From: Diplonema japonicum
Lineage: Eukaryota; Protista; Euglenozoa: Diplonemea
NCBI GenBank assembly: GCA_964019335.1
Contig: OZ025732.1
Coordinates: 248,001 to 312,000, forward strand
Direction: 5' to 3'
Length of the DNA stretch: 64,000 bases
Shown: piece by piece, positions 6,150-61,465 of the stretch
Layout of the letters: each line of letters begins with the position of its first letter
Numbering within the stretch: the stretch's first letter is position 1
Made by a program: the position numbers and the translations under genes
The notes under the pieces: generated by a model
What the model saw: only the letters and a program-made list of their open reading frames with translations
The model's database searches: none
Told to the model about the DNA's origin: nothing

Positions 6150-6209
6150 TTTCAATAATAATGACGAGAATCTTTAATTGCCATGTTACAGGAAGATGTT
6201 TTTTTTTCT

Positions 6210-7265
6210 TGGTCGGCGGTCGGAGCGGCATCGAACAGACAACAAAGACTAGAAAAGCTGAAGCACAAGATCCGCAGTGCGCAGACGGCGGAACCTGCGC
6301 CACGGACGGAGGAGCTGGAACTGGCATGCCTCACTACCCACGACGGCGACGAAGCCCTGGCCCCACACTCAGCCCCAGCCCCGGCCCCGCCCCTCGCAAG
6401 CCACCACAAGAAGAAGCGAAAGGGAGGCGCATGCCCGGACGTGTACCTTGGCCACGACACCAAGCTGGTAAGGACCAGCACAGATCGTGCACCAGAGCCA
6501 CCTCTGCTCGTCAAATGGCGGTCCAAGAGCGCGAAGCGCGGGCAGTTGTGCGACGGACAAGCGGAGCCCGCAAAGAAGAAAGACCGATTGGACCTCCTCA
6601 GGGCGAACCGACGGTCGGGCAAGGCCGCCGTTCACGCCCTGGCTGAAGAACATCGAGCGGGTCTGGAAGATAAGCTCTCCCACACGAAACTGGCGACGGC
6701 CGGGATCGTCGAAGCGGAAGGGGAGTGGACGCCAGAAGCCATGATACGGGTCTGCAAACACGTGCTCGGCGAAGAGCCTAAAACCGCGAAGGAACTCGGG
6801 ATTCACATGAATTTTGTCCGGTTCGCCCTCATCCTGGACTTTGACAAGACGTGGATCATGGCCAGGTATGACTCGGAAGGCTGGAAGGCGAAGGGGGACG
6901 TCGAGAGACGGCAGCAGTTCACGCGGCACGGAGATATGAGAGCCTTGAAGGATCACTACTTCGTGGCCACTGACTGGCTGTTCTTCACCACGCTGCAGTG
7001 GCATAATGTGGGACAGCGCCACCCCCCAAGAACCACGAAGACCTTACGCAAGTAAGAGAGCTGGCCCGAGGGCAAAAAACCTCATTTCTCCTTGGAGATG
7101 AGAACATATATTATAGTGCGACATGATCAGACTGGAACGGCCGCCCCGGGGCATCCTCTGCTCAACCCGGCGGACGTGGGAGGCCCTTCTTCGGAAGGTG
7201 CCAGTCGCTTGATCAGTGTCGTCGAATGCGCGCTATATTTTATATTTTATAAGTACATATAACAA
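6210..7265 (+). mobile_element. Family A element, copy 1
   Basis: 6285-7265 is near-identical to 22553-23525 apart from an 8-nt insertion near 7020. The 5' boundary is approximate. Confidence 0.8.
7130..7206 (+). ncRNA. Conserved pseudoknot RNA motif (A-type), copy 1
   Basis: GACTGG/CCAGTC closing stem, GCA-TCCTC-TGC hairpin, GGGAGG, and a cUUCGg hairpin. It covaries with the B-type motif. Confidence 0.75.
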
Positions 7266-8546: not shown

Positions 8547-8715
8547 GGCCTCCACACAGAGCAGCAGAGCAGGTCCGCATGTGGCACAGTCGGTAGGAAG
8601 GCCTTATACTATTTCTTTTTTTTTATTTGGTAGTTGCAGAGTTCAGCATGTTCTCCCCCCCCTCCTAACTCACACACAGCCTATTTTTGGTGTAAGAAAA
8701 GAACACTATATAAAA

Positions 8716-9825
8716 ATGGAAACCCAACCGCTGGTTGTGAAGACCCCCATGCGGAACAGCTTCGGACGAAGGCTGTTCAACGTGGTGGGCATCAGCGCCA
8801 TGATCATGTACCTTGGGTGCATTGCTGGTACTGTGGTATGCATCTTGTCCGGGTACTACATGATGCTAATGCTCCCTATAGTAGGGCTCATCACCTTCTG
8901 GTGCTGCATGTTGGGGATGTGGATTAGCCCCGAAGTCCGTGCCTGTGCAAGGGAGGCGGAGGATAGGAAGAGCAGCGAGGCCCTTGTAGCATCGTGGCAG
9001 AACACAGAGGCGGTAGTTGTAATGTGGATCAAATGCTACCACATGCGGAGAGTGACATACAGGAAGTCCAATGGAACCAGCGGCACTTCAGAGGAGAGGG
9101 TGAACACTCACAGCGCCGTTGCACCTGTCTACTATGACACACAGGTGGACGAGAGCCCAGCCTTCACGGTACCCAACGAGAAGACGCTGGTGTCCTGCGA
9201 TATCGAGCTGAGCTTCGGGGACAGCACTACACTGCACTCTGTGGAGGACCAGTACCGCAGGTTCCTGGAGGCCAACACACAGGACACGCACCAGGACAAG
9301 GGCCTCAGGGTGGATCTTCCTGAGTTCAGGAGTTCACTGATGGTAAGGAACAAGGGGATGCGTAACCTGTACATGTTATCCACAGCGCTTGGTGTCCTCC
9401 CTGTCGTGCACGCCTGTGTCTCTGGTGTCGTGAAGCGTGGTAACTACTCCGTGAAGAAGAAGCTCCTCATCAGCCGTGAGAGCCCCTACGCAGTACGCCC
9501 TGCTGAGGTTCCCACTGTGGGTGTTCCTTTGGAGAACTCGGCGTGGGCCCTGCCTTACGTCGTGCACTCAGGCCCGGTTAATCAGCAGCAGCAGCAGCAA
9601 GAGCAGCAGCAGCAGCAAGTACAGCAGCCGCAGCAAGTACAGCAGCAGCAGCAACAATGGCAGCAGCAAGGACAGCAGCCGCAGTGGCAGCAGCCTTTGC
9701 AGCCTCCAATGGGTCAGCCAGTGCAGCAGCAGCAGCAAGGACAGCAGCCGCAGTGGCAGCAGTCTTTGCAGCCTCCAATGGGTCAGCCGGTGCAGCAGCA
9801 GCAGCAGCTCACTTATGGTTCGTAG
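8716..9825 (+). CDS. TMEM151-like membrane protein with polyQ/QP tail
   Basis: Two N-terminal TM segments, the I.CYH...ERVNTHSA...Y....DES pattern typical of TMEM151, and a CAG-rich C-terminus. Paralogue of 28628. Confidence 0.75.
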   Translation: METQPLVVKTPMRNSFGRRLFNVVGISAMIMYLGCIAGTVVCILSGYYMMLMLPIVGLITFWCCMLGMWISPEVRACAREAEDRKSSEALVASWQNTEAVVVMWIKCYHMRRVTYRKSNGTSGTSEERVNTHSAVAPVYYDTQVDESPAFTVPNEKTLVSCDIELSFGDSTTLHSVEDQYRRFLEANTQDTHQDKGLRVDLPEFRSSLMVRNKGMRNLYMLSTALGVLPVVHACVSGVVKRGNYSVKKKLLISRESPYAVRPAEVPTVGVPLENSAWALPYVVHSGPVNQQQQQQEQQQQQVQQPQQVQQQQQQWQQQGQQPQWQQPLQPPMGQPVQQQQQGQQPQWQQSLQPPMGQPVQQQQQLTYGS

Positions 9826-10189
9826 GTCATAGGTTTTTCTTTTCTTTCTGGGTGGGAAAGAGGGGGTTTTTCATTTATCACGCACACCCTTTTTTTCTTT
9901 CTTACTTACGGAGGACGATTTTTATAACAGTATGCTTCTTGTGCCGAGCAGAGAAGACCTTCGCAGCTATTTTAAAGTTTGTTTTTTTACTCGTGCGAAC
10001 GTTATTTTCTCCCATTTTCTTTCTCCCTGAACGGTGAGCACCCACCCGCACACAAGATGTTTATCAGGAATCTTTTTCTCGGGGCTTTCTCGCCTTGCTA
10101 CAAATAGCTTGTCTAAGACTGCGCTGAAGAAGCCTTCTCAAGGTTGATGTTGTTTCTTCCATTTCAGATTATCCCCCCCCCCTTTTTCT

Positions 10190-13005: not shown

Positions 13006-14892
13006 CCATCTACCAACGGACCATTTTTGCCCACCAGGGGGTAATTTTCAAAACTTCAAAAAAAGCTATTCCAGCGCAACGCCGGGGCTATATGCCCCCG
13101 GAAATGCCTCCAGATGTCCCAATTCTAGAGAGAGGGTGCCCACAGCAGGGTCCACCCCCACAACATTGTCAAAAATATCGTTCCTGAAGTGCCCGAGAGG
13201 GGATACAAAAAACAAGTCAAAAAAATCGACTGTAAAATTCTATAAAAAGCTATTTAAGGCCTTCTTGACGCGGTTCGTATGTGCCCCAGGGCTGGGGAAC
13301 TTCTTTTTTGACCCCGGGAGGGGTTTCTGGGGGGTATCCCCGGCAAGGTGGTAGTCTTTGAAGCACGGAGTCACGCAAAGTTGTACCAAGCAGGCTGAAC
13401 ACTGAAATAGGGGTCTTTTCGACTTGCAATGCTTGCACCGCACGTTGCACTACTTTTTCGGGGAAATGGTCCCAGAAGGTACTGTCACGGCGCATTGGGG
13501 TCTCAGAGCACTCGTTCTGTGTTTCGGGGCATGGTATTGGGGCAGCCTCGTCGAATGCGCGCTATATTTTATATTTTATAAGTACATATAACAATCGATT
13601 GAAAGAAGAAGAACGTTTACCAAGGTATTGGGGCAGCCTGCTCTGTAGTTGACTTTATCTGTTGTTTAGACTGCCTCCCTAGTAGCCCTTCGATGACTGC
13701 CTCTTTGAAGGGCGTAAATCCACTGTCGTTCGTACTCAGGGCGTTGGGGGGCAAGGCTTCTTTCAAACAAGCCAAGCATTCGCCAGAGATTTACCTAACA
13801 AGTACAAAAATACTTTTAGGGGCCACTTTTAAGTCATAAGGGAGCGTTTATGGCGTTTTGTCACAGCATCACCCAGCGTCGGTTCCGCCCATTGCGGTGT
13901 TGTAAATATGCACTTGGTGGGGGGCGGGATGTCCTTTCCGGCTTTCATTCTCTTTTGGCGGACACGTCAAATTCGACTTCACCGGAACATCCAACGTCGA
14001 TAGAAAGCACGCTGGCATGATGTCATGCCACGTTGTGGTGCAAAGGATGCTCGCGTGCTGGTGGAACTGGGTGTCCCCACGGGATGCGCGTCCTTGGCAT
14101 GCGGCCTCGCTTCTTTGGGGCATCCATGATCTCCGGGAGGCCTTTGCGATAAGTAGAAGTCAGCACGCTTGTTTGTTTCGCTGTGGAAACACAGATTTCC
14201 CAGAATAGTCAAAAAGCGGTCTCTTGACATGACGGTGGCGTACCCAGGGGTGTAGTTGAGAGACGTGGAGCCAGTGTGCCAGTAATCAGAATAATCTGGC
14301 TTGATATCCAAGTCCATCGACAAAAGGACACCTAGGAAGGTATGCAGAGAAGCAGCATCGAGATCCAGGGAGACACCTTTTTTAGCCGCATTTGCCACAT
14401 TGTTCGAAGTTATGACCCGAATAACGTTTGGGACGAGCATTTGGAGAATATATGGTATGGCATTGAGCCTTTGATGTCAAAACAGGGTCCACAAGGATTT
14501 CGATCTTCACGAAACCGGATGCCTTCCAACTGCTCCGGCTTTGCCGTCCAATCACCCTGCTGTGACTCGGAATCGGTCGAATTCGTATCAGAATCACTGT
14601 TTGTATCAAAATTGCATAATAGGGATGAGCCATCAGTGCTGCCATCACTCATAACGTCCTCTTCCAGCCTCTTTCCGGGCGCCTTTTTTTGAAGTGATTT
14701 TTAAGGGTAAATTTGGGCTGGCGTTTTTTTTCATTTTCTTGTTAAGCTAGGGCAGCATTTAGTTTATTTTTTTCATATTTTCCGCGCAGGACCCCGCCGG
14801 CAAGAAAGGGCCGGGCCGTATTGCATTGAAAGCCCTTTGCGTAAAAGATTTTTTTTCAAATCGTCTATATATAGACGCTCGTTGATAAATGG
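13006..14892 (-). mobile_element. Defective piggyBac transposon (family 1)
   Basis: TTAA at 13002-13005 and 14893-14896. TIRs CCATCTACCAACG / CCATTTATCAACG (11/13). Minus-strand transposase relics: MSRDRF, YNTAMGGTD and the Cys-rich CKHC..CSAC...LC...CFKDYH. Confidence 0.9.
13549..13623 (+). mobile_element. 75-bp terminal fragment of family A with a 16-bp TSD
   Basis: Identical to 23480-23554. Flanked by GGTATTGGGGCAGCCT at 13533-13548 and 13624-13639. Confidence 0.9.
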
Positions 14893-19056: not shown

Positions 19057-22039
19057 ACTTCACCGGGCCAGAGTTACTCCCGGACATAAAGGTCTACGAC
19101 CCATGGGAGATCGAAGCTCGGAAGAAGAAGAAGAAGACGAAAAGTCTGAAGGGACTGTCGCGGTACACAGCCGCAGAATTTCTCCACCATTATGGTGTGC
19201 AGAAGGGTTGGAGCAAATACCAACTCGCCCTGAAGGACCGACAGGCGCACAGGGAAAAGGTGGAAGAGAGAAGAAGGAAGAAGGAGCAGGAAGTCCCGGA
19301 CAGCGTACGACAAGAACTGGAACAAGTAAAGATCCAATGCATGCAGCTACAACAGCAACAACAACAGCAACACCAGCACATGCAGCACACCCCAGCACAA
19401 GCCGCAGACACAACTGCAGCCATCGAGCAGATGAAAGCCGAGCTGACGAGACAACAGAAGGCGACGGATCTAACCGGAGTGCTGCAGGAAATTGCAACGT
19501 TGAAGGCACAGCAACAACAGCAAACACATCAACAAGCCCAACAACAAAAGCAAACGCAGGACCATGACCAAAAGCTGCAGAACATGACAGGATTACTGCA
19601 GGAGGTGGCACAGATTAAGACTGCCCAGACAGAACAAAGCGCACTTTTAGAAAAACAACAACACCACCACCAACAACAACTTTTGGAATGGCAGCAGAGG
19701 CAGGAAAAACAGAAGGAGGCGTGGCAACAAGAACAAGAGCAAAGACAGGGCAAACAGCAACAGCTCTGGCAAGAACAGCAAGAAGAATGGCAAGGAAGGC
19801 AACAGCAGCTCAGGCAAGAACAACAAGAGCAATGGCAAGGGTGGCAACAGCAAAACAGGAAAGAGCAGCAGGAGTGGCAGAGAGGGTTGGAGGAAAGGAT
19901 GGTGTCGATACTAACGAAAATATCAGCAACAGAACCGGCACCAGCACATACCAAAAGTCCAAACAACAACCAGCCTCAGCAGACAGTCTCAACAGACCCA
20001 ACAGCCACTCAAATTGACAAGACCCAACAGCTGCAACAGCAACAGCGACCGCCCCAAGAGCCGACACAAACAAGAAGGGAACCCGAAGAGGTACCAGGGA
20101 AGACAACCCAAAAGTTCGTACGATCACGGTCAAGCGAAAGGCCGCCACAGATGAAGAACCCCAAAGACCCCCCAACAAAAAACCACTTGTCATGCAGCGT
20201 CAAGCGCGGACAATAAGAATGAAGCATCAAGTCAAAGAACATCAACAACGTCAAAAACAACAGTCTCACAACCAAAACCATCACACACAAAAACATCGAC
20301 AACAACATTATCAATCCCCCGCCTAGCAGCACCAAGCGCAGACGAGGAGGGAACAGGGCAAAGCCCCCCACAAACAACAACACGACCGACACTCACACAA
20401 GAGCAACAGCTCCAAAGAACACCCACACCGCACACTCCATCAGAAAGATGGAACCCGCCTACGCCATCATCGTATCGCAGACATGCAGAAGTGGCAGCCT
20501 TGATAACAGGGTACGGTGAAGAGGAAAGCGAAGAGGAGGAGTACGCAGTAGTGTTCGAGGAGTCGGAAAAAGAGAGGAAGAAAAGAGAACGAGCAGAGAA
20601 GGTAGCGCTGGTTGCACTGGGAAACAAAAAGGCGCAGGAGCAGCCGATAACGATTGTCGAAGAGGACGCACAGACACTGAAGGTGGTGACATTCAACTGC
20701 AACAGAGGCTGGGGGTCAAGCAGGGAAAGCATCAAACAAGGCCTGAAGAAACACCAGATCGATGTATTATGCCTGCAAGAGGTGAACATGAAGAGGACAA
20801 TTGAAATAGGAGGCTACAACACCTTCCAACAACCCCGCACAGTTCCAAGACAAAAAGGAAAGGCTGCGGAAGGAGGCGGAGTAGCCATTTTGGTGCGGAA
20901 GGGAATACCGACAAGGCAAGGAGAGACATACAGCGGAAAGGTCACTGAAAAGATCTCCGTGCATGTCAGTCAGAAAGCAGGGCCCGAAATCCACATAGTG
21001 AACATTTACCGCCCCCCGATAGGCGGTGGTGATGATACGCGAAAGGAAGACTTCGTGGTGGGAGACCTGCAAGAAGGAGAGAACGTTCTGACAATGGGAG
21101 ACATCAACCTACACCACGAGGCGTGGAGCGCGTTCGCAACGCAGAGCGAGGGCGGCAGGAAGGTGATGACATGGGTCGCGGAAACGGAAAGGATAATTTG
21201 GAACGACCCACGCAAACCAACCTGGCAAAGAAATATACAACGCTCCAGCCCAGACATCGTGATCGGGCAGCCAAGGTGGCCGAGAAAATGGAAGCTGCTG
21301 GAAGGCTGGGTATCGGATCACCGACCAGTCATGACAGAAGTCCCATACGAGAAAACCACAGAGCAAAAAGCAGCACGAAAGGTACTACAATGGCAGTGGC
21401 GAAAAGCAGACTGGACAAAGTACACATTAGACCTTGAACACGGAGCTCCCAAGGTGGAAAGGTGCAAAGACCCCAATGAGATGCTGAAGCAACTGGGTCC
21501 GAAAGCGAAAAAAACACTCCTACATGTAATCAACCTATCATGGCAAGGAGGCTGTGTCCCACAAAGCTGGCGAGATGCACTCACAAAGCCCTTGCCCAAA
21601 CCGATGAAGGACCTCACGGACCCCAGCAGCTATCGTCCCATCGACCTCACCAGCAACCTGTGCAAGCTCGCTGAGAGGATGATAAAGGCAAGACTCAACT
21701 ACTTACTGGAAGATCCGACATCGAACGTGCACAAGCTCTGCAACACACAAGCCGGATTTCAAGCAGGCCGAACAACAATAGAACAGATTGCAGCACTCAC
21801 ACAGAGGCTTAAGGACGGTCAAAAAAAGAAGAAAGTCTCCTACACCATATTCCTCGACTTCGAAAAAGCATTCGACACGGTGCAAAAAGCAAAGCTAATG
21901 GAGAAGCTGACGGCCATGAAGTTCCCACCGCTGTACTTGAACTGGATAGGCGCCTTCCTACAGAATAGACAGGCAGCAGTAAAACTGGAAGGAGAGACAA
22001 GCGACAACCGTGAGAAGGAAGAAGGCGTACCGCAGGGAC

Positions 22040-23554
22040 CTTCTTTTTCTGCTTCTTCTTCTTTTACGCGAACAACGACGACTGTCCATCAGAGTCTGCT
22101 GTGGTCCGATGTCCCGGTGCACCAACGAGGTCGTGGGGGCATCACGAGAGGTCGCACGTCAAGCCCCGGATCACAACCGAGACGTGCACACAGCGCAACG
22201 ACCGCGTGTTTCCCTCGCACCCCAGAACGATTCTCACCCCTGGCCGGTCTGTCGGCTACAGACGACCTGTACTTGCCGGAGCTGACACAGCACAGCAGAG
22301 ACATGTACATGCTGGAGCCACCCGCGGATTTGACTGCTGCGACGGAACCTCCTCCTCCCCCACAGGGGGACATGTACATGCTGGAGCCACCACCCACAGA
22401 GTCGACGCAAACAGACGACGACCCCCATCCTCAGTCAGCGAGACCTGCCCCACGGGGGACCGATGAGGCACAGAAATCTGAAGGTGGTCATAGACCTGAC
22501 TGGCGACGACGACGACAAAGTCTCTGCCCCGACCTCGACCCCGCCATCGGAAACGGCGGAACCTGCGCCACGGACGGAGGAGCTGGAACTGGCATGCCTC
22601 ACTACCCACGACGGCGACGAAGCCCTGGCCCCACACTCAGCCCCAGCCCCGGCCCCGCCCCTCGCAAGCCACCACAAGAAGAAGCGAAAGGGAGGCGCAT
22701 GCCCGGACGTGTACCTTGGCCACGACACCAAGCTGGTAAGGACCAGCACAGATCGTGCACCAGAGCCACCTCTGCTCGTCAAATGGCGGTCCAAGAGCGC
22801 GAAGCGCGGGCAGTTGTGCGACGGACAAGCGGAGCCCGCAAAGAAGAAAGACCGATTGGACCTCCTCAGGGCGAACCGACGGTCGGGCAAGGCCGCCGTT
22901 CACGCCCTGGCTGAAGAACATCGAGCGGGTCTGGAAGATAAGCTCTCCCACACGAAACTGGCGACGGCCGGGATCGTCGAAGCGGAAGGGGAGTGGACGC
23001 CAGAAGCCATGATACGGGTCTGCAAACACGTGCTCGGCGAAGAGCCTAAAACCGCGAAGGAACTCGGGATTCACATGAATTTTGTCCGGTTCGCCCTCAT
23101 CCTGGACTTTGACAAGACGTGGATCATGGCCAGGTATGACTCGGAAGGCTGGAAGGCGAAGGGGGACGTCGAGAGACGGCAGCAGTTCACGCGGCACGGA
23201 GATATGAGAGCCTTGAAGGATCACTACTTCGTGGCCACTGACTGGCTGTTCTTCACCACGCTGCAGTGGCATAATGTGGGACAGCGCAAGAACCACGAAG
23301 ACCTTACGCAAGTAAGAGAGCTGGCCCGAGGGCAAAAAACCTCATTTCTCCTTGGAGATGAGAACATATATTATAGTGCGACATGATCAGACTGGAACGG
23401 CCGCCCCGGGGCATCCTCTGCTCAACCCGGCGGACGTGGGAGGCCCTTCTTCGGAAGGTGCCAGTCGCTTGATCAGTGTCGTCGAATGCGCGCTATATTT
23501 TATATTTTATAAGTACATATAACAATCGATTGAAAGAAGAAGAACGTTTACCAA
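22040..23554 (+). mobile_element. Family A element, copy 2, nested in the LINE RT; carries a 307-aa ORF (22463-23386) of unknown function
   Basis: Starts right after GVPQG and ends ...GAACGTTTACCAA, where the LINE resumes at EWG..LR.LY. Confidence 0.85.
23390..23466 (+). ncRNA. Conserved pseudoknot RNA motif (A-type), copy 2
   Basis: Identical to 7130-7206. Confidence 0.75.
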
Positions 23555-24965
23555 AGGAGTGGGGGAGTATGGCGTCCACCCTCAGGGCGCTGTATCTGAC
23601 GTACGCACTGCCAGTAGTGACATATGCGCTCGGGGTGTACGGACCAACGCTGATAAAGGGAGAGATCAAGAACCTGCAATTGGTGCACAACGAAGCGGCC
23701 AGATGTATCACCGGATGCAAGCGTTCAACCCCCGTCGAAGTTCTGCTGAGGGTAGCCCGGCTCTGGCCAATCGAAGACATGATAGGATATGAGACATCCA
23801 CATGGTACGAACGGTTCCAGAGGATGGAAGGCACCAGCGGGCACCAGGCAGCTCAAGGAGAAGGAAAGGAAGAGCGATCATGGCTACACGAGGCTCGAAA
23901 ACGAGAAAAAAGCCTGAAGATGGAGCAACACCCGCGAGCGCCGCTGCACAGAAAGGCAGCCATCCCACCGTGGGAGTGGAACACGCTGGAGAGGCTGGTC
24001 ATCGTGACAGAAGGCGAAGGGGTAAAGAGGCTGTAAGTAGCGAAACAAAAAACAGCAGCCCTTGAGGTAGTCGCAAAGCTACCGAAAGCCGACATCACTG
24101 TCTACACCGATGGGTCAGTCGAGGAAGGCAAGGGCGGTGCGGGTGTTGTGATAGAAAGAACAGAGGGAGCGACGGCCGAGATAAGCGCAGGCGTCGGCGA
24201 CCTATGCGACAGCTTCCAAGCAGAGATGTGCGCAATCAACACAGCGCTTGCGAGGCTCGTGAAGGAGGACACGCAAGGGATGCAGATCAACCTGCTGACA
24301 GACTCTGGCGTGTCTGCTGAAATTAAGACAAGGACCCGCAAGGCAACAAGAAGACGTGGTGGTCGAGGCATGGCACAACATACACGCGCTGACAACGAGA
24401 GGAAACCACCTCACATGCTGCTTTATCCCAGGCCACTGCGGGATAGAAGGAAACGAGAAGGCAGACCAACTCGCCAGCAACGGCAGAGACAAAGAAACAA
24501 CACAGAAGATAAGCATGGGTGCGGCAAAGAACCACCTAAGAAAAGCTGGGAAGCGGGGAATATTAGCAGATTGAACAAGGAAAAGACATACAATAAGTGG
24601 GCAGGAAACACAGAAGCACCAAAGAAGATGGAAGGGCTGAACAGGAAAGAGGAAGCTGAGACACATCCTTGTGGAGAACCCACGAAAAGCAATCCAATAC
24701 CTCGAAGACACCGGGGACCTGCCCCCCTCCGCAACAACTCCACAACAACCAACTAACCTGCCGAAGTAGCAAGCCAATCAGAAGGCGGCTGAGGCACTAA
24801 AGATTCATTCAGAATCCCGAGATCCCATCCCTGATCCCCAATCCTGTTTCTCGCAGAAACAGAGAGCACTACCAACCCCCCACCACAGCAGCCGACGAGA
24901 GAGACGCAGCAGTGAAAATAAAAAAGCCCCCCTGAACAAGTTTTCCCCCACCCCTATAACGTGAT

Positions 24966-25011
<46 letters not shown>

Positions 25012-25192
25012 ACTGAGGTCCTTTTACAAGACCTTACGGAAAACGCCTACTACTCCTCAACCGGCCCACCGGCCGAACCACCGGTCTGGCCCCCAGCCCG
25101 CTTATCGTCACGGATACCAACCTGCCTACGATAACCGCTGGGGCAAAGATCAAAACAGGTACGAGATCCGCAAGGACTTCTTCCTTAGCACA

Positions 25193-26590
25193 ATGGCAAA
25201 GGACCAAGTCAAGAAGTCGCGGGACATCTCCAAGCCTAGCCCGGTCAGCTGCAAACGAAACAACGGCAGCATTGACTGGGCCCTCTGGGAGTCTCTCAGC
25301 CAGGACGCAGCCGCCAAGTTCATGGCCAAGTACAGCCGCATCGTAAAGAACATGCGCCAAGGAAAGGCCCCCGAACAGGACGCAGCAGGTATCATCTACC
25401 TCGCTGTCGACAAACACGGTGAACCTGTGTACGCAGGGCAGACGTTTAACACCTTACGTCGTCGTATGCAGGGCCACTGGAGCAGCGCCAGATCGCACAG
25501 AGAGAACGCTGAAAGCAACGACACCCGCTTTCACAAGGCCCTCAGGGAAAACGGGGGCCCGTTATTCGCTTTCCCCGTCGAATCGATCAACCCCAAGTTC
25601 TTCGACGACGCCAAGTCCTTCCGTCGTGTTGCGATCCCCAGGGAGAACCAGTACATCAATAGGCTGGCTTGCTCCCTTAACATGCGTGGTAGGTTTGCTA
25701 AGACGCAGACCCGTCGCCGCCGCAACACGAAACGTAAACCTAAGACGGTACGCGAGCAGCAACAGCAGCGACACCAACACCAGGGGCGCTCGAATGCCAA
25801 ACAGGACCCCAGCAGCAACACTACTACGTCCCCTTCGAACCCCAACAACACCCCCACCAGATCTACTGCTCCCTCGATACGGCTGAACGACGACGGGGAG
25901 CTGTCGATCCAGGCTACTGGGTCCAACTACAAGTCCCTGTGTATGAAGATCACCGCGATGTGTGCACACCCCGATGTGCTGAACTACGACTTCACTACCT
26001 GGGCCCCCAAGACCGTCTTCAGGTACCTGAACTTCCTGAGACGTTACTTCGTCGGGAACTTCTTCACCGCCAAGATCGCGGCTATCGAACGAGGCCTCAC
26101 CAACCGCCTCAGCCCTGCCCTCTTGAAAAAGGTGGTCCGCCGAGACGAAGGCTTCGTGTGGTTCAAAACGAGTTTTGACCACAAGGCCAAGGAGATGATC
26201 CTCTGGCGTAAGGTCTTCGAGGACAAGGAGGTAATTGCGGCATGCCCCAAGCCAGCCCTCCTTCGCAGAGTACACATGTGCAACAAGCTTGGCCACAGTG
26301 TGCAATGTGACGAAGCTCAGCATCGAGACCCCGCGTCCAGAAGCGGCCGAGCCTACAACAAACTGCCCTGCTCGAAGCGCAAGACCTCACACACACATGA
26401 GGGACACGCCTGCGGACTAGCAGCAGAGGTCATCGATGACGACGAAGTGAAGGAGGTTCTGAACAGAGGCATGAAGTTCCGCCTCTCAACACACGCCCTC
26501 CTCTCTTCCCAAAGTCTCGAGGAGGACATCAACGGGTTCATCACTCAGAACTTTCCAGTCCACCCGTCGGGACACCGGACACGGGAGTGA
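25193..26590 (+). pseudogene. GIY-YIG endonuclease + linker of the PLE ORF, truncated before the RT
   Basis: Motifs as above. Homology ends shortly after GMKFR. Confidence 0.8.
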
Positions 26591-26941
26591 CACACCGATG
26601 CCGTCGTCTACCATGGGACACGCGACACTCCAACCAGTGGTCGGCTCCCAGATTGTGACAACGTCGGCTGTGGAGTCATCGCTCGCCCGAGCCGTGACAA
26701 CGCCCGTTCTGGCAGACGCCCCCCTCGGCGCCCGCCAGGTACAGCTCACTCCTTGCATCCAGTCCTTCCATGAGAACATCGGACTCGGGATGGATACGCC
26801 GATGGTTCCCGCCATGGGACACGCGACGCTTCAACCGGTGGTCAACGCCCAGAGAGACACGACGTTGACCCTGGAGCCGCCCGTGGCCCGAGCCGAGGCA
26901 GACGCTCCCCTAGACCCTCCCAGGCGGATGGTGGTTTAGAA

Positions 26942-28021
26942 ATGATCGACCTCACGCAGGACTCCCCGGACAGGCCCTCGCGCAAGAAGAAGCACGACGG
27001 CACTGCTCACGAGCACGAAAGCCGTCGTGGTAAGAGTTCCTCCACAGGCGATGGCGATCTTCTCATCCTGCGCGAGCAGTCACAGGGTTTTGATCAGGAA
27101 GCCCTCAACCGAAGGGCCCTCCAGAGACGGATGGATCGATACCTCAGTCTCTTGGTCTACTTCCGGCGACACCCGGAGCTCTTGGACGAACACCAGCGTC
27201 AGCTCCTGTCGGTCGGCCCCCTCCCGATGCACCTGGACACCTCTCCACATCAACTGCTGCTCGAGGCCCGTGACACGGATAGAACTGCCGACCAACAGGC
27301 AACCGTCGCCAACCAGGAACAGCTTCTTCTGATTGCGCACAAGGCGTTGCCTACCACCGAACGTCTTCGGTTGTCTCACGAATGGCACTCGGGGCTGAAC
27401 ACCGCGGTACAGCAACAGTGGTGGTCGGAGTTCTTCGCCCAAGGCGGCTGGAAACACCCACTCTTCGGTTCCGAGGCCCCAAGAGGTGACGAGACTAGGA
27501 CTCCAGGGAGGACCCCTCTCCTGCTCACCTACAACGGGGAGAGGAACAAACGCCCGGAACCCGAAGACGGCCCCGCCCTTCCCGCGGCCAAACGGGATCT
27601 CGCCGCGACGAGGCCGAACACCAGAGTCACTGGACTTGTCGCCCTTAAGAGGCTCACCAGGGAAGCAGACGTCGACGGCCCTGAGGACCTGGATGAGCTT
27701 CGACACCTGGGCTTCCTTTCCCAGGGCGAGGCCGTCTTTGACCTCAGCTGCATGTCCAGGGCTTGCACACACTTCCTGGGTGAGACCCCCATGGTCACGG
27801 TCCCCCTCGACACACGCGTCGCGATCCCGTGTCTGCTGGTCTGTTATGACTCGACGTGGCTCTACGCTTCCCGCCAGGGACAGGGCTTTCGGTTGCAGAC
27901 CCAAGGGTTCAAGGACAAGTCGTATCCGACTGTGGCAGCCCTACTCGCTGACTTCGTGGGGGCAGGGACCCTCTACTACAGCGAGTCACAGTGGTCGACT
28001 GTGCTGAACTCCTACAACTAG
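26942..28021 (+). CDS. Unknown accessory ORF within family B
   Basis: 359-aa open frame. The diverged copy at 42258-42565 keeps the same protein sequence in pieces. Confidence 0.5.
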   Translation: MIDLTQDSPDRPSRKKKHDGTAHEHESRRGKSSSTGDGDLLILREQSQGFDQEALNRRALQRRMDRYLSLLVYFRRHPELLDEHQRQLLSVGPLPMHLDTSPHQLLLEARDTDRTADQQATVANQEQLLLIAHKALPTTERLRLSHEWHSGLNTAVQQQWWSEFFAQGGWKHPLFGSEAPRGDETRTPGRTPLLLTYNGERNKRPEPEDGPALPAAKRDLAATRPNTRVTGLVALKRLTREADVDGPEDLDELRHLGFLSQGEAVFDLSCMSRACTHFLGETPMVTVPLDTRVAIPCLLVCYDSTWLYASRQGQGFRLQTQGFKDKSYPTVAALLADFVGAGTLYYSESQWSTVLNSYN

Positions 28022-28325
28022 GAACTACTGGAGACGACCCTACGCAATGTAGGAGTGCCGGCCCGGCGTGCTACGAGGGCGATAGGCTATGCAGGGTCTC
28101 ACAGACCTCGCACCCTATGATTTTAGTTTCCACCTTTTCCTTTTCCACTTCTTGTCTTTTAACTTAACCCTTCTGCTTTCCCAACATGGTTTCCGTCCCG
28201 GGTATGACGTTAAACTGCGTCCGCCGACGCATTTGGGTCAACATTCTCTGATGACCAAGCCGTCTTTTTCCGTTTCTTCTCCCCTTCTCTTTGTTATGTT
28301 ATTTTCATTATTCTTTCTGGCGATA

Positions 28326-28399
28326 GACTGATACGGGCCATGGAAGCAACCTCTGCTTAATTCCTGGTACGTGGGAGGCTCCTCTTGAGGATGTCAGTC
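28326..28399 (+). ncRNA. Conserved pseudoknot RNA motif (B-type), copy 1
   Basis: GACTGA/TCAGTC stem, GCA-ACCTC-TGC, GGGAGG, TCCTC/GAGGA hairpin. Confidence 0.75.
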
Positions 28400-28627
28400 A
28401 CCTTTTCCCTTTTTTACTCGACTCTCTGTTTTCGTATGCAGTATTTATTCTTTCCCACCCCTTTTTATCTATTTCTTCGCTTCTTCATCCTAACTTAAAA
28501 CCATTTCAGTTACCTCTTTACTATTTCTTTTTTTTATTTGGTAGTTACATTGTTCTCCCCCCCCCCCCCCCCCCTTCCCCTGACTCACACAGCCTATTAT
28601 TTCGTGTAAGAAAAGAACACTATAAAA

Positions 28628-29776
28628 ATGGAAACCCAACCGCTGGTTGCGAAGACTCCCACGCAGAACAGCTTCGCACGCATGATTTTCAACGTGGTGA
28701 GCATCAGCGTCATGATCATGTACCTTGGGTGCATTGCTGGTACTGTGGCATGCATCTTGTCCGGGTACTACATGCTGCTAATGCTCCCTATAGGAGGGCT
28801 CACCACCTTCTGGTGCTGCATGGTGGCCATGTGGATTAACCCCGAAGTCCGTGCCTGTGCAGGGGAGGCGGAGGATAAGGAGAGCAGCGAGGCCCTTGTA
28901 GCATCGTGGCAGAACACAGAGGCGGTAGTTGTAATGTGGATCAAATGCTACCACATGCGGACAGTGGCATATAGGAACTCCGATGGAAGCAGCGGCACTA
29001 CACAGCAGAGGGTGGACACGCACAGCGCCATTGCACCTGTCTACTATGACGCACAGGTGGACGAGAGCCCAGCCTTCACGGTACCCAACGAGAAGACGCT
29101 GGTGTCCTGCGATGTCGAGCTGAGCTTCGGGGACAGCACTACACTGCACTCTGTGGAGGACCAGTACCGCAGGTTCCTGGAGGCCAACACACAAGACACG
29201 CACCAGGACAGGGGCTTCGGGGTGGATCTTCCTGAGTTCAGGAGTTCACTGATGGTAAGGAACAGCAATGGTCTGGGGATGCGTAACCTGTACATGTTAT
29301 CCACAGCGCTTGGTGTCCTCCCTGTCGTGCACGCCTGTGTCTCTGGTGTCGTGAAGCGTGGTAACTACTCCGTGAAGAAGAAGCTCCTCATCAGCCGTGA
29401 GAGCCCCTACGCAGTACGCCCTGCTGAGGTTCCCACTGTGGGTGTTCCTTTGGAGAACTCGGCGTGGGCCCTGCCTTACGTCGTGCACTCAGGCCCGGTT
29501 AATCAGCAGCAGCAGCAGCAAGAGCAGCAGCAGCAGCAAGGACAGCAGCCGCAGTGGCAGCAGCCTCAGCAGCCTCCAATGGGTCAGCCAGTGCAGCAAG
29601 GACAGCAGCCGCAGTGGCAGCAGCAGCAGCAGCTGCAGCCAATGCAAGGACAGCAGCAGCAGCAGTGGCAGCAGCAGCAAGGACAGCAGCCGCAGTGGCA
29701 GCAGCCTCAGCAGCCTCCAATGGGTCAGCCAGTGCAGCAGCAGCAGCAGCAGCAGCAGCTCACTTATGGTTCGTAG
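28628..29776 (+). CDS. TMEM151-like membrane protein with polyQ/QP tail, paralogue 2
   Basis: Close paralogue of 8716-9825. Confidence 0.75.
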   Translation: METQPLVAKTPTQNSFARMIFNVVSISVMIMYLGCIAGTVACILSGYYMLLMLPIGGLTTFWCCMVAMWINPEVRACAGEAEDKESSEALVASWQNTEAVVVMWIKCYHMRTVAYRNSDGSSGTTQQRVDTHSAIAPVYYDAQVDESPAFTVPNEKTLVSCDVELSFGDSTTLHSVEDQYRRFLEANTQDTHQDRGFGVDLPEFRSSLMVRNSNGLGMRNLYMLSTALGVLPVVHACVSGVVKRGNYSVKKKLLISRESPYAVRPAEVPTVGVPLENSAWALPYVVHSGPVNQQQQQQEQQQQQGQQPQWQQPQQPPMGQPVQQGQQPQWQQQQQLQPMQGQQQQQWQQQQGQQPQWQQPQQPPMGQPVQQQQQQQQLTYGS

Positions 29777-29973
29777 GTCATAGGTTTTTCTTTGGGGTGG
29801 GAAAGAGGGGATTTCTCATTTATCACGCACACCCTTTTTTTTCTTTCTTACTTCAGAGAATGATTTTTATAACAGTATGCAACTGTGCCGAGCAAGAAAG
29901 CCTTCGCAGCTATTTTAATGGTTTTTTTTTTTACTCGTGCGAACGGGCTTTCTCGCCTTGCTACAAATAGCTT

Positions 29974-42257: not shown

Positions 42258-43059
42258 GCCAACCAAGAGCAACTACTTGTGACTGCGCACAACGCACTGC
42301 CTGAGTCCGAGCGTCTCTGGCTGTCTCACGAGTGGCACTCGGGACTGAACACTCCGGTGCAGCAACAGTGGTGGTCGGTGTTCTTCGCCAGGGTGGATGG
42401 AAGCACCCGCTCTTTGGCTCCGAGACCCCAGGAGGCGATAAAGCTAGAAGGGTTCGGGACAAGTCCTACTCGACCGTGGCAGCCCTGCTCGCTGACTTTG
42501 TAGGGGCCGGGACCCTCTATTACAACGAGTCGCAGTGGTCGACTGTCCTGCATTCCTACAACTAGGAACAATCGGAAACAACCCTACACAATGTAGGAGT
42601 GCCGGCCCGGCGTGCTACGAGGGCGATAGGCTATGCGAGGTTTCACAGACCTCGCACCCTATTATTTAGTGTCCACCCTTTCCATTTTCTTTCCAATTTT
42701 AAACTTTTTATTACCCTTTCTGCTTTTCCCTTTCCCTACATGTTTTCGGTCCCGGGTATGACGTTAAACTGCGCCCGCCGACGCGTTTGAACCAGCACTT
42801 CCTGGCGACCAGGCCGTCTTTTCTCTTTTCCTTCTTCACTTCGTTCCGTTATTTTCATTATTCTTTCCGGCGATAGACTGATACGGGCCATGGAAGCAAC
42901 CTCTGCTTAATTCCTGGTACGTGGGAGGCTCCTCTTGAGGATGTCAGTCACCTTTTTCCTTCTTTATTCGACTCTCTGTTTTCGTATGCAGTATTTTTTC
43001 TTTTCCACCCCTTTTTATCTATTTTTTTCGCTTCTCTATTCTAACTTAAAATCATTTCA
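42258..43059 (+). mobile_element. 5'-truncated, internally deleted family B PLE copy
   Basis: Homologous to 27308-28509. GCTGC is duplicated at 42253-42257 and 43060-43064. Confidence 0.85.
42876..42949 (+). ncRNA. Conserved pseudoknot RNA motif (B-type), copy 2
   Basis: 100% identical to 28326-28399 despite diverged flanks. Confidence 0.75.
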
Positions 43060-46824: not shown

Positions 46825-47987
46825 ATGTTGAAGTACGTGCTTGCTGCTTGTGTTTCCGCCGCAATGGTATGGGGGGGGAGAAGAAGGTGATTACACAACA
46901 CTCATAACCCCCACAGGCACAGGACTGCACTTCGCTTGTGCATCATGTTGGATCGTGTGATTTGGGGCAGAGGTTGGCGGATCTCAATGAAATGACCAGC
47001 TGCTCAGCCTACATCTGTAGTAACCTTCTTGACCCCTATGCGATTGCACACGGCAGCGACATGACTAAGAAGATAGCAGGGTCTGGCTATGGCTGCGTCA
47101 TCGAAGACTGGGATGGGATGTATGTGGGTGACGTGATCTGCATGAATGACCCTAATCCGCCTCCGCCCACTCCTCAGCCCACCCCTGAGCCCCCTTCATA
47201 TCCCCCATGGGCACAGGACTGTGATTCGCTTTCTCATGAGGTGGATTCGTGTTCAAGGGGGCAGGTGTTGGTGGATCTCGAGACCATGACCAGCTGCAAA
47301 GATACCATCTGTGGCCTTCTTGACCCCTATGCGATTGCACACGGGAGAGACATGACCAAGAAGGTAGCAGGGTCTGGCTACGGCTGCCTCATCGAAGACT
47401 GGGATGGGATGCATGTGGGTGACGTGATCTGCATGAATGACCCTAATCCACCCCCCCCTGCGAACTGCTGGAATCTTGTGAACGGGACAGGGTCATGCCC
47501 TGCAGGTATGCAGCCGGCTGACCTTGCGACACTGACAAGGTGCCAGGACAAGGTGTGCTCGGACATTTTGGGGAGCTACGGGGAGGCGCACGGGAACGAC
47601 ACGGCGTGGAAGCTCCTGGGGAGTGGCTTCGGATGCGAGATTTCGCCGTGGCACGGGGAGGAGGTCTCCACTGTGATCTGCATGCCAGGAGAGGCCCCTC
47701 CCTCCCCTCCTCCCTCTCCTCCCACTCCTCCCAGTCCAACACTTCCCGCTCTCTGCGACGGGGTCAGGGTTCGGAGCAGGTTCTGCCCAACAGGTGAAGA
47801 GCCTGTGAGTCGGGAGGTGGTGAGTCAGTGCTCCCAGATGATCTGCGACAGCATGGGGTTCCACAACACCACACGTGGACTGGAGAACAACTTCAAGCTC
47901 ATGGGGAACGCCTTCGGCTGCAGGCTGGAGCCCTGGGTGAACGCAAGCATCGACCTCATCACCTGTTCTCCCTCTCAGGGGCTCTGA
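46825..47987 (+). CDS. Secreted Cys-rich protein, 4 APT-like domains (intron 46867-46916)
   Basis: Same exon/intron structure, in frame. Confidence 0.85.
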
Positions 47988-60049: not shown

Positions 60050-61465
60050 ATGAAGCGGGTTATATTCATGATGTTCGCACTACTAGCAGTAGGCAGGTTG
60101 CTCCGGACGCAGCAGGAAAGCCGTTCTGACATCGCTTCTCCTCCTTCGGCCTTTGCTTCAGTTCCTACTCCTGGTCCTACCACAGTTACAACTCCTGTTC
60201 CTACAGCAGTTCCCACCACAGCTTCAACTCCTGTTCCTACCACAGTTACAGCTCCTGTTCCTACAGCAGTTCCTACCCCTGTTCTAACTCCTGTTCCGAC
60301 TCCTGTTCCTACAGCAGTAACTACCGCAGCTACAACTCCTGTTCCTACCACAGTAACCACAGTAACTACCACAGCTTCACCTCCTGTTCCTACCACAGTT
60401 ACAACTCCTGTTCCTACAGCAGTAACTACCACAGCTTCAACTCCTGTTCCTACCACAGTTACAACTCCTGTTCCCACAGCAGTAACTACCACAGCTTCAG
60501 CTCCTGTTCCAACTCCTGTACCTACTACCACAGCAGTTCCTACAACTGCAGTTCGAACTCCTGTTCCCACAGCAGCACCGGCACTCAAGATTGCGACGAA
60601 GGATCTACCAAGATGCAAGGAGATGGCAGACATATACCCTGGTGATCGGAAGCTGACGAAGTGGGTACCGAAGAACTGCAGGCTGAAGGACTTCTCTGTA
60701 GAGGAGAAGGGCAAGTGCATAGGCGAGAAGGGCATCCTCGTGGTGACCGACTCCTTGGGGGAGGCGATCTTGAGGAGGGTGTCGTCCGACTTCTTAGTGG
60801 CGAAGCGGCGGTTCAAGCACATCAAAGAGCGGTACCCTAATGCTGTTCACCACATGGCGAAGAGCGTGGCTACTTCGTCGAAGCCTATGCTTAAGGAGAA
60901 GCACCTTCCGTTCCTCAGGAAGGCTTCCTTCGTCGTCTTATCGAACGGTTTGTGGGACATCGGGATGGCATCTTGTGGGATCAACCACTATTTCGACTTT
61001 CTTCGTTTGAAGGTTGTGACATACATGAAAGAGATGCCTGCAAACGGGACAATGGTCCTGTACAACATTCCGTACATCCACCACAGGGAGCCAACAGGCT
61101 GGGGCACGTATTGCAATCCGGGGCCTCGTGTGGCGGCGTACAGGGAGGCCCTGAAGCTGGTCTCCGCGTGCACTGGTGTGGGCATCTTTGACACATACCA
61201 AATGCAGAAGCAGGACATGACAACACCTGACGGGATACACGCTTCTGGGAAGGGAAACCAGGCCAGAGCCAGCGTCGTTTACAACATGATGTGCCCTCCG
61301 GAGAAGGATAGGCTGCGGCCGTTCTACCCTCAGTTGGCTTGTACTGATGAAGCCATTAAGGAGGCCAAGGCTAGGTGGGCAGCAGTCCCTGAAGCAGCCA
61401 ATCGTCCGAAGCGCTGCCCGTACACGAGGCCGAAGTGCTACAACAGCAGCATTCTTCCTTGGTAG
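60050..61465 (+). CDS. SGNH/TBL-like protein, paralogue 5, with Thr/Pro mucin-like stem
   Basis: Signal/TM segment, TPVPT repeats, TDS, NGLWD, DGIH. Confidence 0.8.
   Translation: MKRVIFMMFALLAVGRLLRTQQESRSDIASPPSAFASVPTPGPTTVTTPVPTAVPTTASTPVPTTVTAPVPTAVPTPVLTPVPTPVPTAVTTAATTPVPTTVTTVTTTASPPVPTTVTTPVPTAVTTTASTPVPTTVTTPVPTAVTTTASAPVPTPVPTTTAVPTTAVRTPVPTAAPALKIATKDLPRCKEMADIYPGDRKLTKWVPKNCRLKDFSVEEKGKCIGEKGILVVTDSLGEAILRRVSSDFLVAKRRFKHIKERYPNAVHHMAKSVATSSKPMLKEKHLPFLRKASFVVLSNGLWDIGMASCGINHYFDFLRLKVVTYMKEMPANGTMVLYNIPYIHHREPTGWGTYCNPGPRVAAYREALKLVSACTGVGIFDTYQMQKQDMTTPDGIHASGKGNQARASVVYNMMCPPEKDRLRPFYPQLACTDEAIKEAKARWAAVPEAANRPKRCPYTRPKCYNSSILPW

What the first reader, a model, noticed from the sequence alone, without database searches (positions are those of the whole stretch)
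28326..28399. Unclassified covarying pseudoknot RNA shared by two unrelated tail-less mobile elements: candidate new ribozyme of N-terminal-endonuclease Penelope-like elements
Seen: family A (7130-7206, 23390-23466) and family B (28326-28399, 42876-42949) share no obvious DNA similarity, yet both carry the same architecture ~90-110 nt before their 3' termini. A = GACUGG A ACG G CCG cc CCGGG GCA UCCUC UGC UCAA CCCGG CGG A CGU GGGAGG C CCUUC UUCG GAAGG UG CCAGUC. B = GACUGA U ACG G GCCA u GGAA GCA ACCUC UGC UUAA UUCC UGGU A CGU GGGAGG C UCCUC UU GAGGA UG UCAGUC. The variable stems change compensatorily (G-C to A-U in the closing stem; CCGGG/CCCGG to GGAA/UUCC; CCG/CGG to CCA/UGG; different terminal hairpins). 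The core is invariant: ACG/CGU, a G.A opposition, GCA-WCCUC-UGC, a UYAA bulge, GGGAGGC and UG. Loop CCUC can pair with GAGG to form a pseudoknot. The two B copies are 100% identical here while their flanks carry many substitutions and indels. A cUUCGg loop fixes the + strand. Knowledge: canonical PLEs carry hammerheads in their pseudo-LTRs, whereas Naiad/Chlamys PLEs were described as lacking canonical hammerheads. Inference: this is the processing (self-cleaving) or RT-recognition RNA of these elements. It lacks the hammerhead, HDV and twister consensus residues, although the topology is loosely twister-like.
Basis: partly seen in the sequence, partly recalled or inferred. Interest (0 to 1): 0.92.

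Follow-up and report, generated by a model that had tools for sequence, protein, structure and literature searches.

The report
Shared 3'UTR RNA fold of retroposons
A 75-letter RNA fold with three helices sits near the end of two different jumping genes in a marine protist (a diplonemid). It is real, conserved and unlisted in RNA databases, but it looks more like a docking site for the copying machinery than a self-cutting RNA.

Summary
The 74-77 nt motif is at all four stated places. Seven to eight base pairs change on both sides between families A and B, and two more do so in a third variant. Rfam gives no match. The exact core occurs 188 times in this 62.5-Mb diplonemid genome, against 0 for the reversed control.

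- Family A is an APE+RT LINE, not a Penelope-like element.
- Family B encodes a borderline GIY-YIG domain and no detectable reverse transcriptase.
- A and B do share other DNA: a second ~45-nt 3'UTR block at or near the ORF stop.
- The CCUC/GAGG pseudoknot has no covariation and looks sterically strained.
- Nothing shows self-cleavage. RNA ends could not be mapped because the public runs are held only as contigs.

The one hint is that 5'-truncated copies cluster at junction bases G51-G54. A reverse-transcriptase stall or ordinary RNA breakage explains this as well as cleavage does.

My best reading (0.4) is a cis-acting 3'UTR cassette for template recognition or RNP assembly, shared by a LINE and an RT-less partner. 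A new ribozyme gets about 0.1.

The scan flagged this same motif before on other pieces of this genome (s1-867107, s1-867067).

The parts
7130..7206 (+). Motif (module 2), family A copy 1. It is a three-way junction: a closing stem, a long bulged arm ending in a WCCUC loop, the junction GGGAGGC, a UUCG hairpin and UG.
   Evidence: (105.9 bits)
23390..23466 (+). Motif (module 2), family A copy 2, in the 3'UTR of a long LINE A copy.
28326..28399 (+). Motif (module 2), family B copy 1 (the finding).
   Evidence: (91.4 bits)
42876..42949 (+). Motif (module 2), family B copy 2. This is a 5'-truncated copy of a subfamily about 86% identical to B1. The motif itself is 100% identical.
28038..28082 (+). 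Module 1, family B copy 1. This is the second block shared with A: a hairpin with a GCAA(U) loop followed by a GC-rich segment. It starts 17 nt after the ORF's TAG stop (28019-28021).
42582..42626 (+). Module 1, family B copy 2.
23302..23335 (+). Module 1, family A copy 2. This is a form with a 12-nt internal deletion compared with most A copies. In intact A copies the ORF2 UAA stop lies inside its hairpin.
7042..7075 (+). Module 1, family A copy 1 (same deleted form). The ORF 6183-7055 stops on the UAA inside it.
23340..23362 (+). A-specific hairpin between the two modules. One pair changes C-G to U-A between A subfamilies.
23467..23555 (+). Family A tail, ending ...ACGTTTACCAA(G/A). It has no poly(A) and no similarity to the B tail.
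28400..28515 (+). Family B tail. It is pyrimidine-rich and ends ...CATTTCAG (28509), plus up to 6 nt in some copies. It is unrelated to the A tail.
20155..22911 (+). LINE A ORF2, with Exo_endo_phos (APE) and RVT_1 domains. The C-terminal part continues in another frame (22334-23383) in this copy.
25193..26587 (+). Family B ORF, first piece, with a GIY-YIG-like domain. The frame runs on to 28018 across two conserved in-frame TGA codons (26588 and 26771). No RT was detected.

Best explanation
The motif is one of two conserved RNA modules that make up a 3'UTR cassette. Module 1 is a small hairpin with a GCAA-type loop plus a GC-rich segment, at or within about 20 nt of the ORF stop. Module 2 is the 74-77 nt three-way junction. 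The cassette is carried by an autonomous APE-type LINE (family A). It is also carried by a 3.5-kb retroposon (family B) that has LINE-like 5' truncations but encodes no recognisable reverse transcriptase. I propose that the cassette is the cis-acting recognition or assembly site of the retrotransposition RNP. The covarying stems act as a scaffold. They present the invariant junction (ACG/CGU, G.A, GGGAGGC, UG), the WCCUC loop and the UYAA bulge to a protein. That protein is most likely the LINE A ORF2 protein, so B would be copied by A's enzyme in the way a SINE uses its partner LINE. Shown here: the fold, its conservation against diverged flanks, its sharing by both families, the copy number and the TPRT-type copies. 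Inferred: protein binding, the identity of the protein and B's dependence on A.
For: The structure is supported by 7-8 two-sided pair changes between A and B and two more in the A' variant. The unpaired junction and loop bases are invariant. The motif is 100% conserved between B subfamilies that differ by 12-19% in the flanks. It is also identical among A subfamilies with different flanks. A second block is shared by A and B: 77 exact copies, only the two types, and 0 for the control. Its hairpin shows a compensatory U-A to C-G change. Family A has APE and RVT_1 domains. B copies are 5'-truncated at many positions, as LINE copies are. One B copy has an 11-bp target-site duplication, and A copies have duplications of 7-14 bp. 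No RT was found in B. Both sides of the motif are inherited together, so the template RNA crosses it intact. From my own knowledge: stringent-type LINEs and R2 are recognised through structured 3'UTR RNA, and SINEs borrow that part from their partner LINE.
Against: The last 90-116 nt of A and B are unrelated, whereas classic LINE/SINE partners also share the extreme 3' end. B encodes its own GIY-YIG-like nuclease. An RT-bearing relative of B may exist elsewhere, because only about 0.35 Mb of the genome could be read. A derivative that lacks the 3' strand of the long arm still has 6 copies. No binding or mobility data exist. A host protein could be the partner instead of ORF2p.
Confidence: 0.4

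Rival explanations
1. The motif binds a host factor. Both retroposons carry it to hijack a cellular pathway, for example RNA processing out of polycistronic transcripts, protection of a tail-less RNA, export or translation. It would then be independent of either element's own enzyme.
For: The motif is shared by elements with different proteins and unrelated tails. Insert orientation is strongly contig-biased: C85, C60 and C95 are almost all plus, while C52, C81, C91 and C96 are almost all minus. This fits co-transcription with unidirectional gene clusters, as described for Diplonema papillatum (PMC10161547). The B tail is a pyrimidine tract ending in AG.
Against: No copy outside retroposons was seen in the roughly 0.35 Mb read. 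No host gene carrying the motif was identified. No similarity to any curated cis-element was found.
Confidence: 0.25
2. The motif is a new class of self-cleaving ribozyme with a twister-like topology. The C-rich terminal loop pairs with the G-rich strand at the base of its own arm, and the RNA cuts itself in or near the junction.
For: It is a compact fold with invariant unpaired bases and covarying stems. The retroposon context fits, in a genome where transcripts must be processed. Six 5'-truncated copies (3 A, 3 B) start at G51-G54 of the junction and none at positions 41-50 of the same 14-nt window. The order of elements resembles a twister with a P5 stem (layout in PMC8501958).
Against: No ribozyme family matches, even at E<=10. 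The conserved twister, hammerhead and HDV bases are absent. The copy starts spread over 4 nt. Two more lie at the loop/P3 border and one lies at G1, which suits an RT stall or breakage at unpaired sites as well. A cut would separate the ORF from the tail needed for TPRT, yet nearly all copies keep both. The pseudoknot has no covariation, and its 2-nt linker would have to cross an arm of about 15 layers. RNA ends could not be examined.
Confidence: 0.1
3. The motif is a recoding element, either a non-canonical SECIS or a distal readthrough stimulator, that serves the in-frame UGA codons of these elements.
For: The B frame is open for 1016 codons across two TGA codons. Both are kept in the other copies that cover them. 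Naiad PLEs of spiders and clams encode selenoproteins with a 3'UTR SECIS (PMC8557442).
Against: The motif has no AUGA/GA quartet and no AAR loop, and no SECIS model matches. No in-frame UGA was found in LINE A's ORF2 in the copy read, and intact A copies end on UAA. The part of B after the first UGA scores poorly as a protein.
Confidence: 0.03
4. The motif has no function of its own. It is a stretch recently passed from one element to the other by recombination or template switching.
For: Two blocks are shared in the same order, which shows common descent of the 3'UTRs.
Against: Twenty-four of 77 aligned positions differ between A and B. Seven to eight pairs changed on both sides and none changed on one side only. 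The motif is invariant where the flanks have diverged by 12-19%.
Confidence: 0.04

Closest known systems
Structured 3'UTR recognition elements of non-LTR retrotransposons (R2 3'UTR; the stem-loop of stringent LINEs such as UnaL2, shared with their SINEs). This comparison is from my own knowledge.
   Same: A conserved, covarying RNA structure lies in the 3'UTR of a TPRT element upstream of the 3' end. It is also carried by an element without its own RT.
   Different: There is no sequence or model similarity: Rfam's R2 element and every other family were silent. The extreme 3' ends of the two carriers are unrelated. The second carrier is 3.5 kb long and encodes a GIY-YIG-like protein, so it is not a short SINE.
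Twister ribozyme (form with a P5 stem)
   Same: A closing stem is followed by an arm with internal bulges. The C-rich terminal loop is complementary to a G-rich strand at the arm's base. An A-rich bulge lies on the 3' strand, and an extra hairpin precedes the closing strand (compare the layout).
   Different: The roughly ten conserved twister bases are missing. There is no second pseudoknot and no U-A site: the 5' junction strand is a single variable base. The arm is about 15 layers long rather than about 8. Rfam's twister models do not match.
HDV-like ribozymes of retrotransposons (R2; L1Tc/SIDER Pr77 of trypanosomatids, PMC4035085)
   Same: The size is about 77 nt. A 3-bp helix caps a C-rich loop, and Gs directly 3' of the neighbouring helix resemble P3/L3 and P1.1. 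The retroposon context in Euglenozoa also fits.
   Different: The helices are nested and not a double pseudoknot, because the P1-like 5' strand follows the closing strand instead of preceding it. The strand before the closing helix is UG, with no conserved C. The motif lies in the 3'UTR and not at the element's first base. No 5'-truncation peak occurs at the equivalent site N7/A8.
Hammerhead ribozymes in Penelope-like element pseudo-LTRs (PMC8557442)
   Same: A three-way junction lies near the 3' end of a retroelement, with junction strands of 1, 7 and 2 nt (hammerhead: 1, 7 and 3).
   Different: There is no CUGANGA or GAAA core and no Rfam hammerhead match. The carriers are not shown to be PLEs.

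Membership tests
Hammerhead ribozyme | Three-way junction with the CUGANGA and GAAA core strands and a UH cleavage site | tested here: not met
   The junction strands are N, GGGAGGC and UG. No hammerhead model matches at E<=10.
HDV-like ribozyme | Nested double pseudoknot, with the P1 5' strand before the P2 5' strand | tested here: not met
   The covariation-supported helices are strictly nested. No HDV-like model matches.
HDV-like ribozyme | Catalytic C in the strand between P4 and P2 | tested here: not met
   The equivalent strand is U-G in both families.
Twister ribozyme | About ten conserved bases, two pseudoknots (T1 and T2) and a U-A cleavage site in L1 | tested here: not met
   Only a T1-like complement (CCUC/GAGG) is present. 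The L1 5' strand is one variable base. No twister model matches.
Any self-cleaving ribozyme | Site-specific cleavage giving 5'-OH and 2',3'-cyclic-phosphate ends | not testable with these tools
   The public runs are held only as contigs. The only indirect hint is the cluster of copy starts at G51-G54.
Penelope-like element, Naiad/Chlamys type (as the host of the motif) | N-terminal GIY-YIG endonuclease | tested here: inconclusive
   In B, Pfam GIY-YIG scores 22.9 bits against a cut-off of 22.6 for the 465-aa ORF, and 20.9 bits for the longer piece. The Atlas look-alikes are GIY-YIG proteins at 0.87. Family A has an APE domain instead.
Penelope-like element, Naiad/Chlamys type (as the host of the motif) | C-terminal PLE/TERT-like reverse transcriptase in the same ORF | tested here: not met
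   B has no RT hit in any frame at E<=1, none in PDB sequences, no homologue at all, and I saw no YxDD-type motif in the translation. A's RT is a LINE-type RVT_1 preceded by an APE domain.
Eukaryotic SECIS element | AUGA...GA non-Watson-Crick quartet and an AAR apical motif | tested here: not met
   The invariant bases hold neither feature. No SECIS model matches.
LINE and partner sharing a 3' recognition module | The same 3'UTR structure in an autonomous LINE and in an RT-less retroposon | tested here: met
   Modules 1 and 2 occur in both families. A has APE+RT. B has no detectable RT but has TPRT-like truncations.
LINE and partner sharing a 3' recognition module | Shared extreme 3' end | tested here: not met
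   The tails align no better than shuffled sequence: score 13 against a shuffled mean of 15.
LINE and partner sharing a 3' recognition module | The module is bound by the LINE's RT and needed for mobilisation | not testable with these tools
   This needs binding and retrotransposition assays.

The most novel reading that the evidence does not exclude
The three-way junction is a new class of small self-cleaving (or host-nuclease-guiding) RNA. It would cut in its G-rich junction and process retroposon RNA out of the long polycistronic transcripts of diplonemids. The cluster of copy starts at G51-G54 would be its footprint.
Probability: 0.1. Interest if true: 0.85.

Novelty: new variant of a known kind. 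Interest (0 to 1): 0.45.

Why it matters
Diplonemids are among the most abundant marine eukaryotes, and their mobile elements are almost undescribed. This is an uncatalogued structured RNA family with strong compensatory support and about 200 copies. It is shared by a LINE and by a nuclease-encoding retroposon that has no recognisable reverse transcriptase. If it is the handle by which one enzyme copies both, it gives a defined RNA-protein recognition pair for a protist LINE. It would also be an unusual case of a large, protein-coding element riding on a LINE. If instead it cleaves, it would be a new ribozyme class tied to the processing of polycistronic transcripts. Either outcome can be tested with a 77-nt RNA.

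Tried and rejected
- **Rfam:** searched at gathering score on the whole window and at E<=10 on both motif regions. Only noise came back.
- **tRNA-like reading:** ARAGORN finds nothing in the window.
- **RNA end mapping:** all nine runs on offer are held only as contigs. No starts or ends could be read.
- **Relatives elsewhere:**
  - The exact core pattern gave 0 hits in the metagenome and viral collections.
  - The module 1 pattern gave 13 GC-rich contigs, none with the motif.
  - A protein search with LINE A's C-terminus found one transcriptome protein.
- **Divergent families in this genome:** the covariance model run over 264 kb found only A, B and broken copies.
- **A 'discrete 425-nt short element':** I inferred this. 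It was an artefact of using a truncated copy as the query.
- **A PLE with RT upstream of a B motif in L042:** that region holds LRR and ankyrin genes instead.
- **SECIS or other recoding reading:** the defining features are absent.
- **HDV-like refolding with upstream sequence:** I found no complementary P1 strand by inspection.

Full report
**What is there**

A1 and A2 are identical over 77 nt, and B1 and B2 are identical over 74 nt. A and B agree at 53 of 77 aligned positions.

- a 6-bp closing stem;
- one unpaired base;
- a long arm made of ACG/CGU, a G.A opposition, two further helices and a 3-bp cap with a WCCUC loop, with a UYAA bulge on its 3' side;
- the strand GGGAGGC;
- a short hairpin;
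- UG, then the closing strand.

Eight pairs keep pairing through changes on both sides. When the partners are slid by 1-3 columns, only 32-40% are paired.

A third lineage, A', carries CCCAGCAG on the 3' strand. Its 5' strand answers with U at position 18 in all 15 copies and with U at position 13 in three copies. Eight copies carry an uncompensated form.

A G.U pair in B, together with the elements' coding strand, places the RNA on the plus strand. The hairpin loops are UUCG in A and most plausibly CUUG in B.

Folding energy alone is unremarkable, with z-scores of -0.17 and -0.73. The case therefore rests on covariation.

**It is more than chance, and it is under constraint**

The core pattern occurs 188 times in the 62.5-Mb assembly and never in the reversed control.

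B1 and B2 belong to subfamilies that differ at 19% of positions upstream and 12% downstream, yet they are 74/74 identical in the motif. By my own calculation the chance of that is about 1e-5 to 1e-6. A copies whose flanks belong to different subfamilies also carry the identical motif. Those 30 loci were picked as top model hits, so that sample is biased.

**What carries it**

Earlier notes of this scan identify the genome as a diplonemid.

Family A is not a Penelope-like element. Its ORF2 has Exo_endo_phos (APE) and RVT_1 domains. In intact copies the ORF ends on a UAA, 85 nt before the motif. Its copies carry target-site duplications of 7-14 bp.

Family B is a 3.5-kb unit (about 25020-28515) whose copies are 5'-truncated at many positions, like LINE copies. 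Its frame is open for 1016 codons across two TGA codons that other copies keep.

Only a borderline GIY-YIG hit is found in B. No reverse transcriptase appears:
- in any frame against Pfam at E<=1;
- against PDB sequences;
- in the 5.8-billion-protein search, which found no relative at all;
- in the Atlas.

So 'N-terminal-endonuclease PLE' is unverified for B and wrong for A. The statement that Naiad and Chlamys elements lack canonical hammerheads is correct as literature (PMC8557442).

**A second shared block**

A and B are not otherwise dissimilar. Both carry a ~45-nt block that I call module 1. It is a 5-bp hairpin with a GCAA (A) or GCAAU (B) loop, with one compensatory U-A to C-G change, followed by a GC-rich segment.

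In A the block overlaps the ORF2 stop codon. In B it starts 17 nt after the ORF stop. It has 77 exact copies of just these two types, and 0 for the control. The window's two A copies carry a 12-nt deletion in it.

By contrast, the tails after the motif (about 90 nt in A, about 110-116 nt in B) are unrelated. The two elements therefore share a two-module 3'UTR cassette, not a single isolated motif.

**The pseudoknot**

CCUC in the loop and GAGG in the junction are complementary, but both are invariant in every lineage seen. There is therefore no covariation for or against the pairing.

Geometrically, the loop caps an arm of about 15 stacked layers, and its proposed partner begins 2 nt after the base of that same arm. 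If the arm stacks coaxially, the linker cannot span it. The pairing needs sharp bends at the two bulges. Twister does fold back in this way, but over a much shorter arm (layout in PMC8501958). I treat the pseudoknot as unproven.

**Is it a ribozyme?**

No Rfam ribozyme model matches, even at E<=10 on about 230 nt. The defining bases of hammerhead, HDV-like and twister ribozymes are absent.

Direct evidence was out of reach. Every public run on offer is kept only as contigs, which cannot show RNA ends. Those contigs do show that two other coded organisms hold both versions nearly unchanged. In the B-like contigs, similarity stops exactly at the motif's last base.

As a proxy I looked for copies whose 5' end falls inside the motif, using anchored patterns that print 14 upstream letters. 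The results were:
- **Positions 41-54:** six copies (three A, three B) start at G51, A52, A52, G53, G53 and G54. None starts at positions 41-50.
- **Loop/P3 border:** two B copies start here.
- **G1:** one copy starts here.
- **N7/A8, the HDV-equivalent site:** no copy starts here.
- **Extra B tail copies:** these start at about motif position 66, the foot of the hairpin.

These positions are all unpaired or at helix feet. That supports the fold in vivo. It also fits a reverse-transcriptase stall or ordinary breakage at exposed sites as well as it fits self-cleavage. The spread over 4 nt argues against a single scissile bond. The numbers are small, and the background rate was only roughly estimated.

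Two further points weigh against a ribozyme. Nearly all copies keep both the ORF side and the tail side, so the template crosses the motif uncut. A derivative that has lost the 3' strand of the long arm still has six copies.

**Most likely mechanism**

The pattern here is variable but always paired stems, invariant junction and loops, placement in the 3'UTR, and sharing between an autonomous LINE and an element without a detectable RT that nevertheless spreads by TPRT-like copies. That is the pattern of a protein-recognition RNA.

My best reading (0.4) is that modules 1 and 2 are the template-recognition or RNP-assembly site of LINE A's machinery, and that B rides on it. This is inference from anatomy and from what is known of R2 and of stringent LINE/SINE pairs (my own knowledge). 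No binding was tested.

The main rival (0.25) is that a host factor is the partner. Inserts are strongly co-oriented within contigs. Genes in Diplonema papillatum are likely co-transcribed in long unidirectional clusters (PMC10161547). B's tail is a pyrimidine tract ending in AG. These elements may therefore depend on host RNA processing.

The other readings are a ribozyme (0.1), a recoding element (0.03) and a functionless recent transfer (0.04). The remainder is unassigned.

**Limits**

- No relatives were found in the metagenome or viral collections.
- The covariation evidence comes from three to four lineages of one genome.

The same motif was flagged by first readers on two other pieces of this genome (s1-867107, s1-867067).

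Noticed in passing
window 24971-28021: Family B's reading frame is open for 1016 codons across two in-frame TGA codons (26588-26590 and 26771-26773). Both are kept in the other copies that cover them, and similar HRTR(E/D) residues lie next to each. The part after the first TGA is low-complexity and scores poorly as a protein. This may be programmed readthrough.
   Followed up: partly
window 28038-28082, 42582-42626, 23302-23335, 7042-7075: Module 1 is a second conserved 3'UTR block shared by families A and B. It has 77 exact copies genome-wide. The UAA stop of LINE A's ORF2 lies inside its hairpin.
   Followed up: yes
whole genome (one search list): Motif-bearing inserts are almost all on one strand within a contig: plus on C85, C60 and C95, minus on C52, C81, C91 and C96. 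This suggests co-orientation with polycistronic gene clusters.
   Followed up: no
G000:C85:163633-163757, 60484-60610, 47679-47805: Three full B 3' ends are followed directly by a second copy of the last ~125 nt. The second copy starts at about motif position 66. This is a PLE-like 'tail' or a template-switch duplication.
   Followed up: partly
G000:C16:433523, C86:304026, C87:256406, C91:314561, C7:490740, C27:351949: Six copies of an A-type motif have positions 30-44 (the 3' strand of the long arm) replaced by GATCG. This is either a propagating broken derivative or a segmental duplication.
   Followed up: no
window 13548-13623: A 76-nt fragment of the family A tail, 5'-truncated after the motif, is flanked by a 14-bp target-site duplication.
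   Followed up: partly
window 28516-29945 and 8603-10001: A 1.4-kb repeat (90% identical) has a 382/414-aa ORF with no Pfam hit. One copy abuts the end of B1. The other lies 1.3 kb after the truncated A1.
   Followed up: no
L001, L002, L004, L005, L007, L019, L022, L030: One old 5'-truncated A insertion, with a target-site duplication of about 17 bp, sits inside another repeat. It has been amplified as part of that repeat, which inflates the apparent A copy number.
   Followed up: partly
window 28190-28235: Another block of B's 3'UTR is nearly invariant between the two B subfamilies. It includes a GCGUC/GACGC hairpin and is not shared with A.
   Followed up: no
window 24971-25006: A 36-nt A-rich run lies about 15 nt before B1's 5' end.
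   Followed up: no
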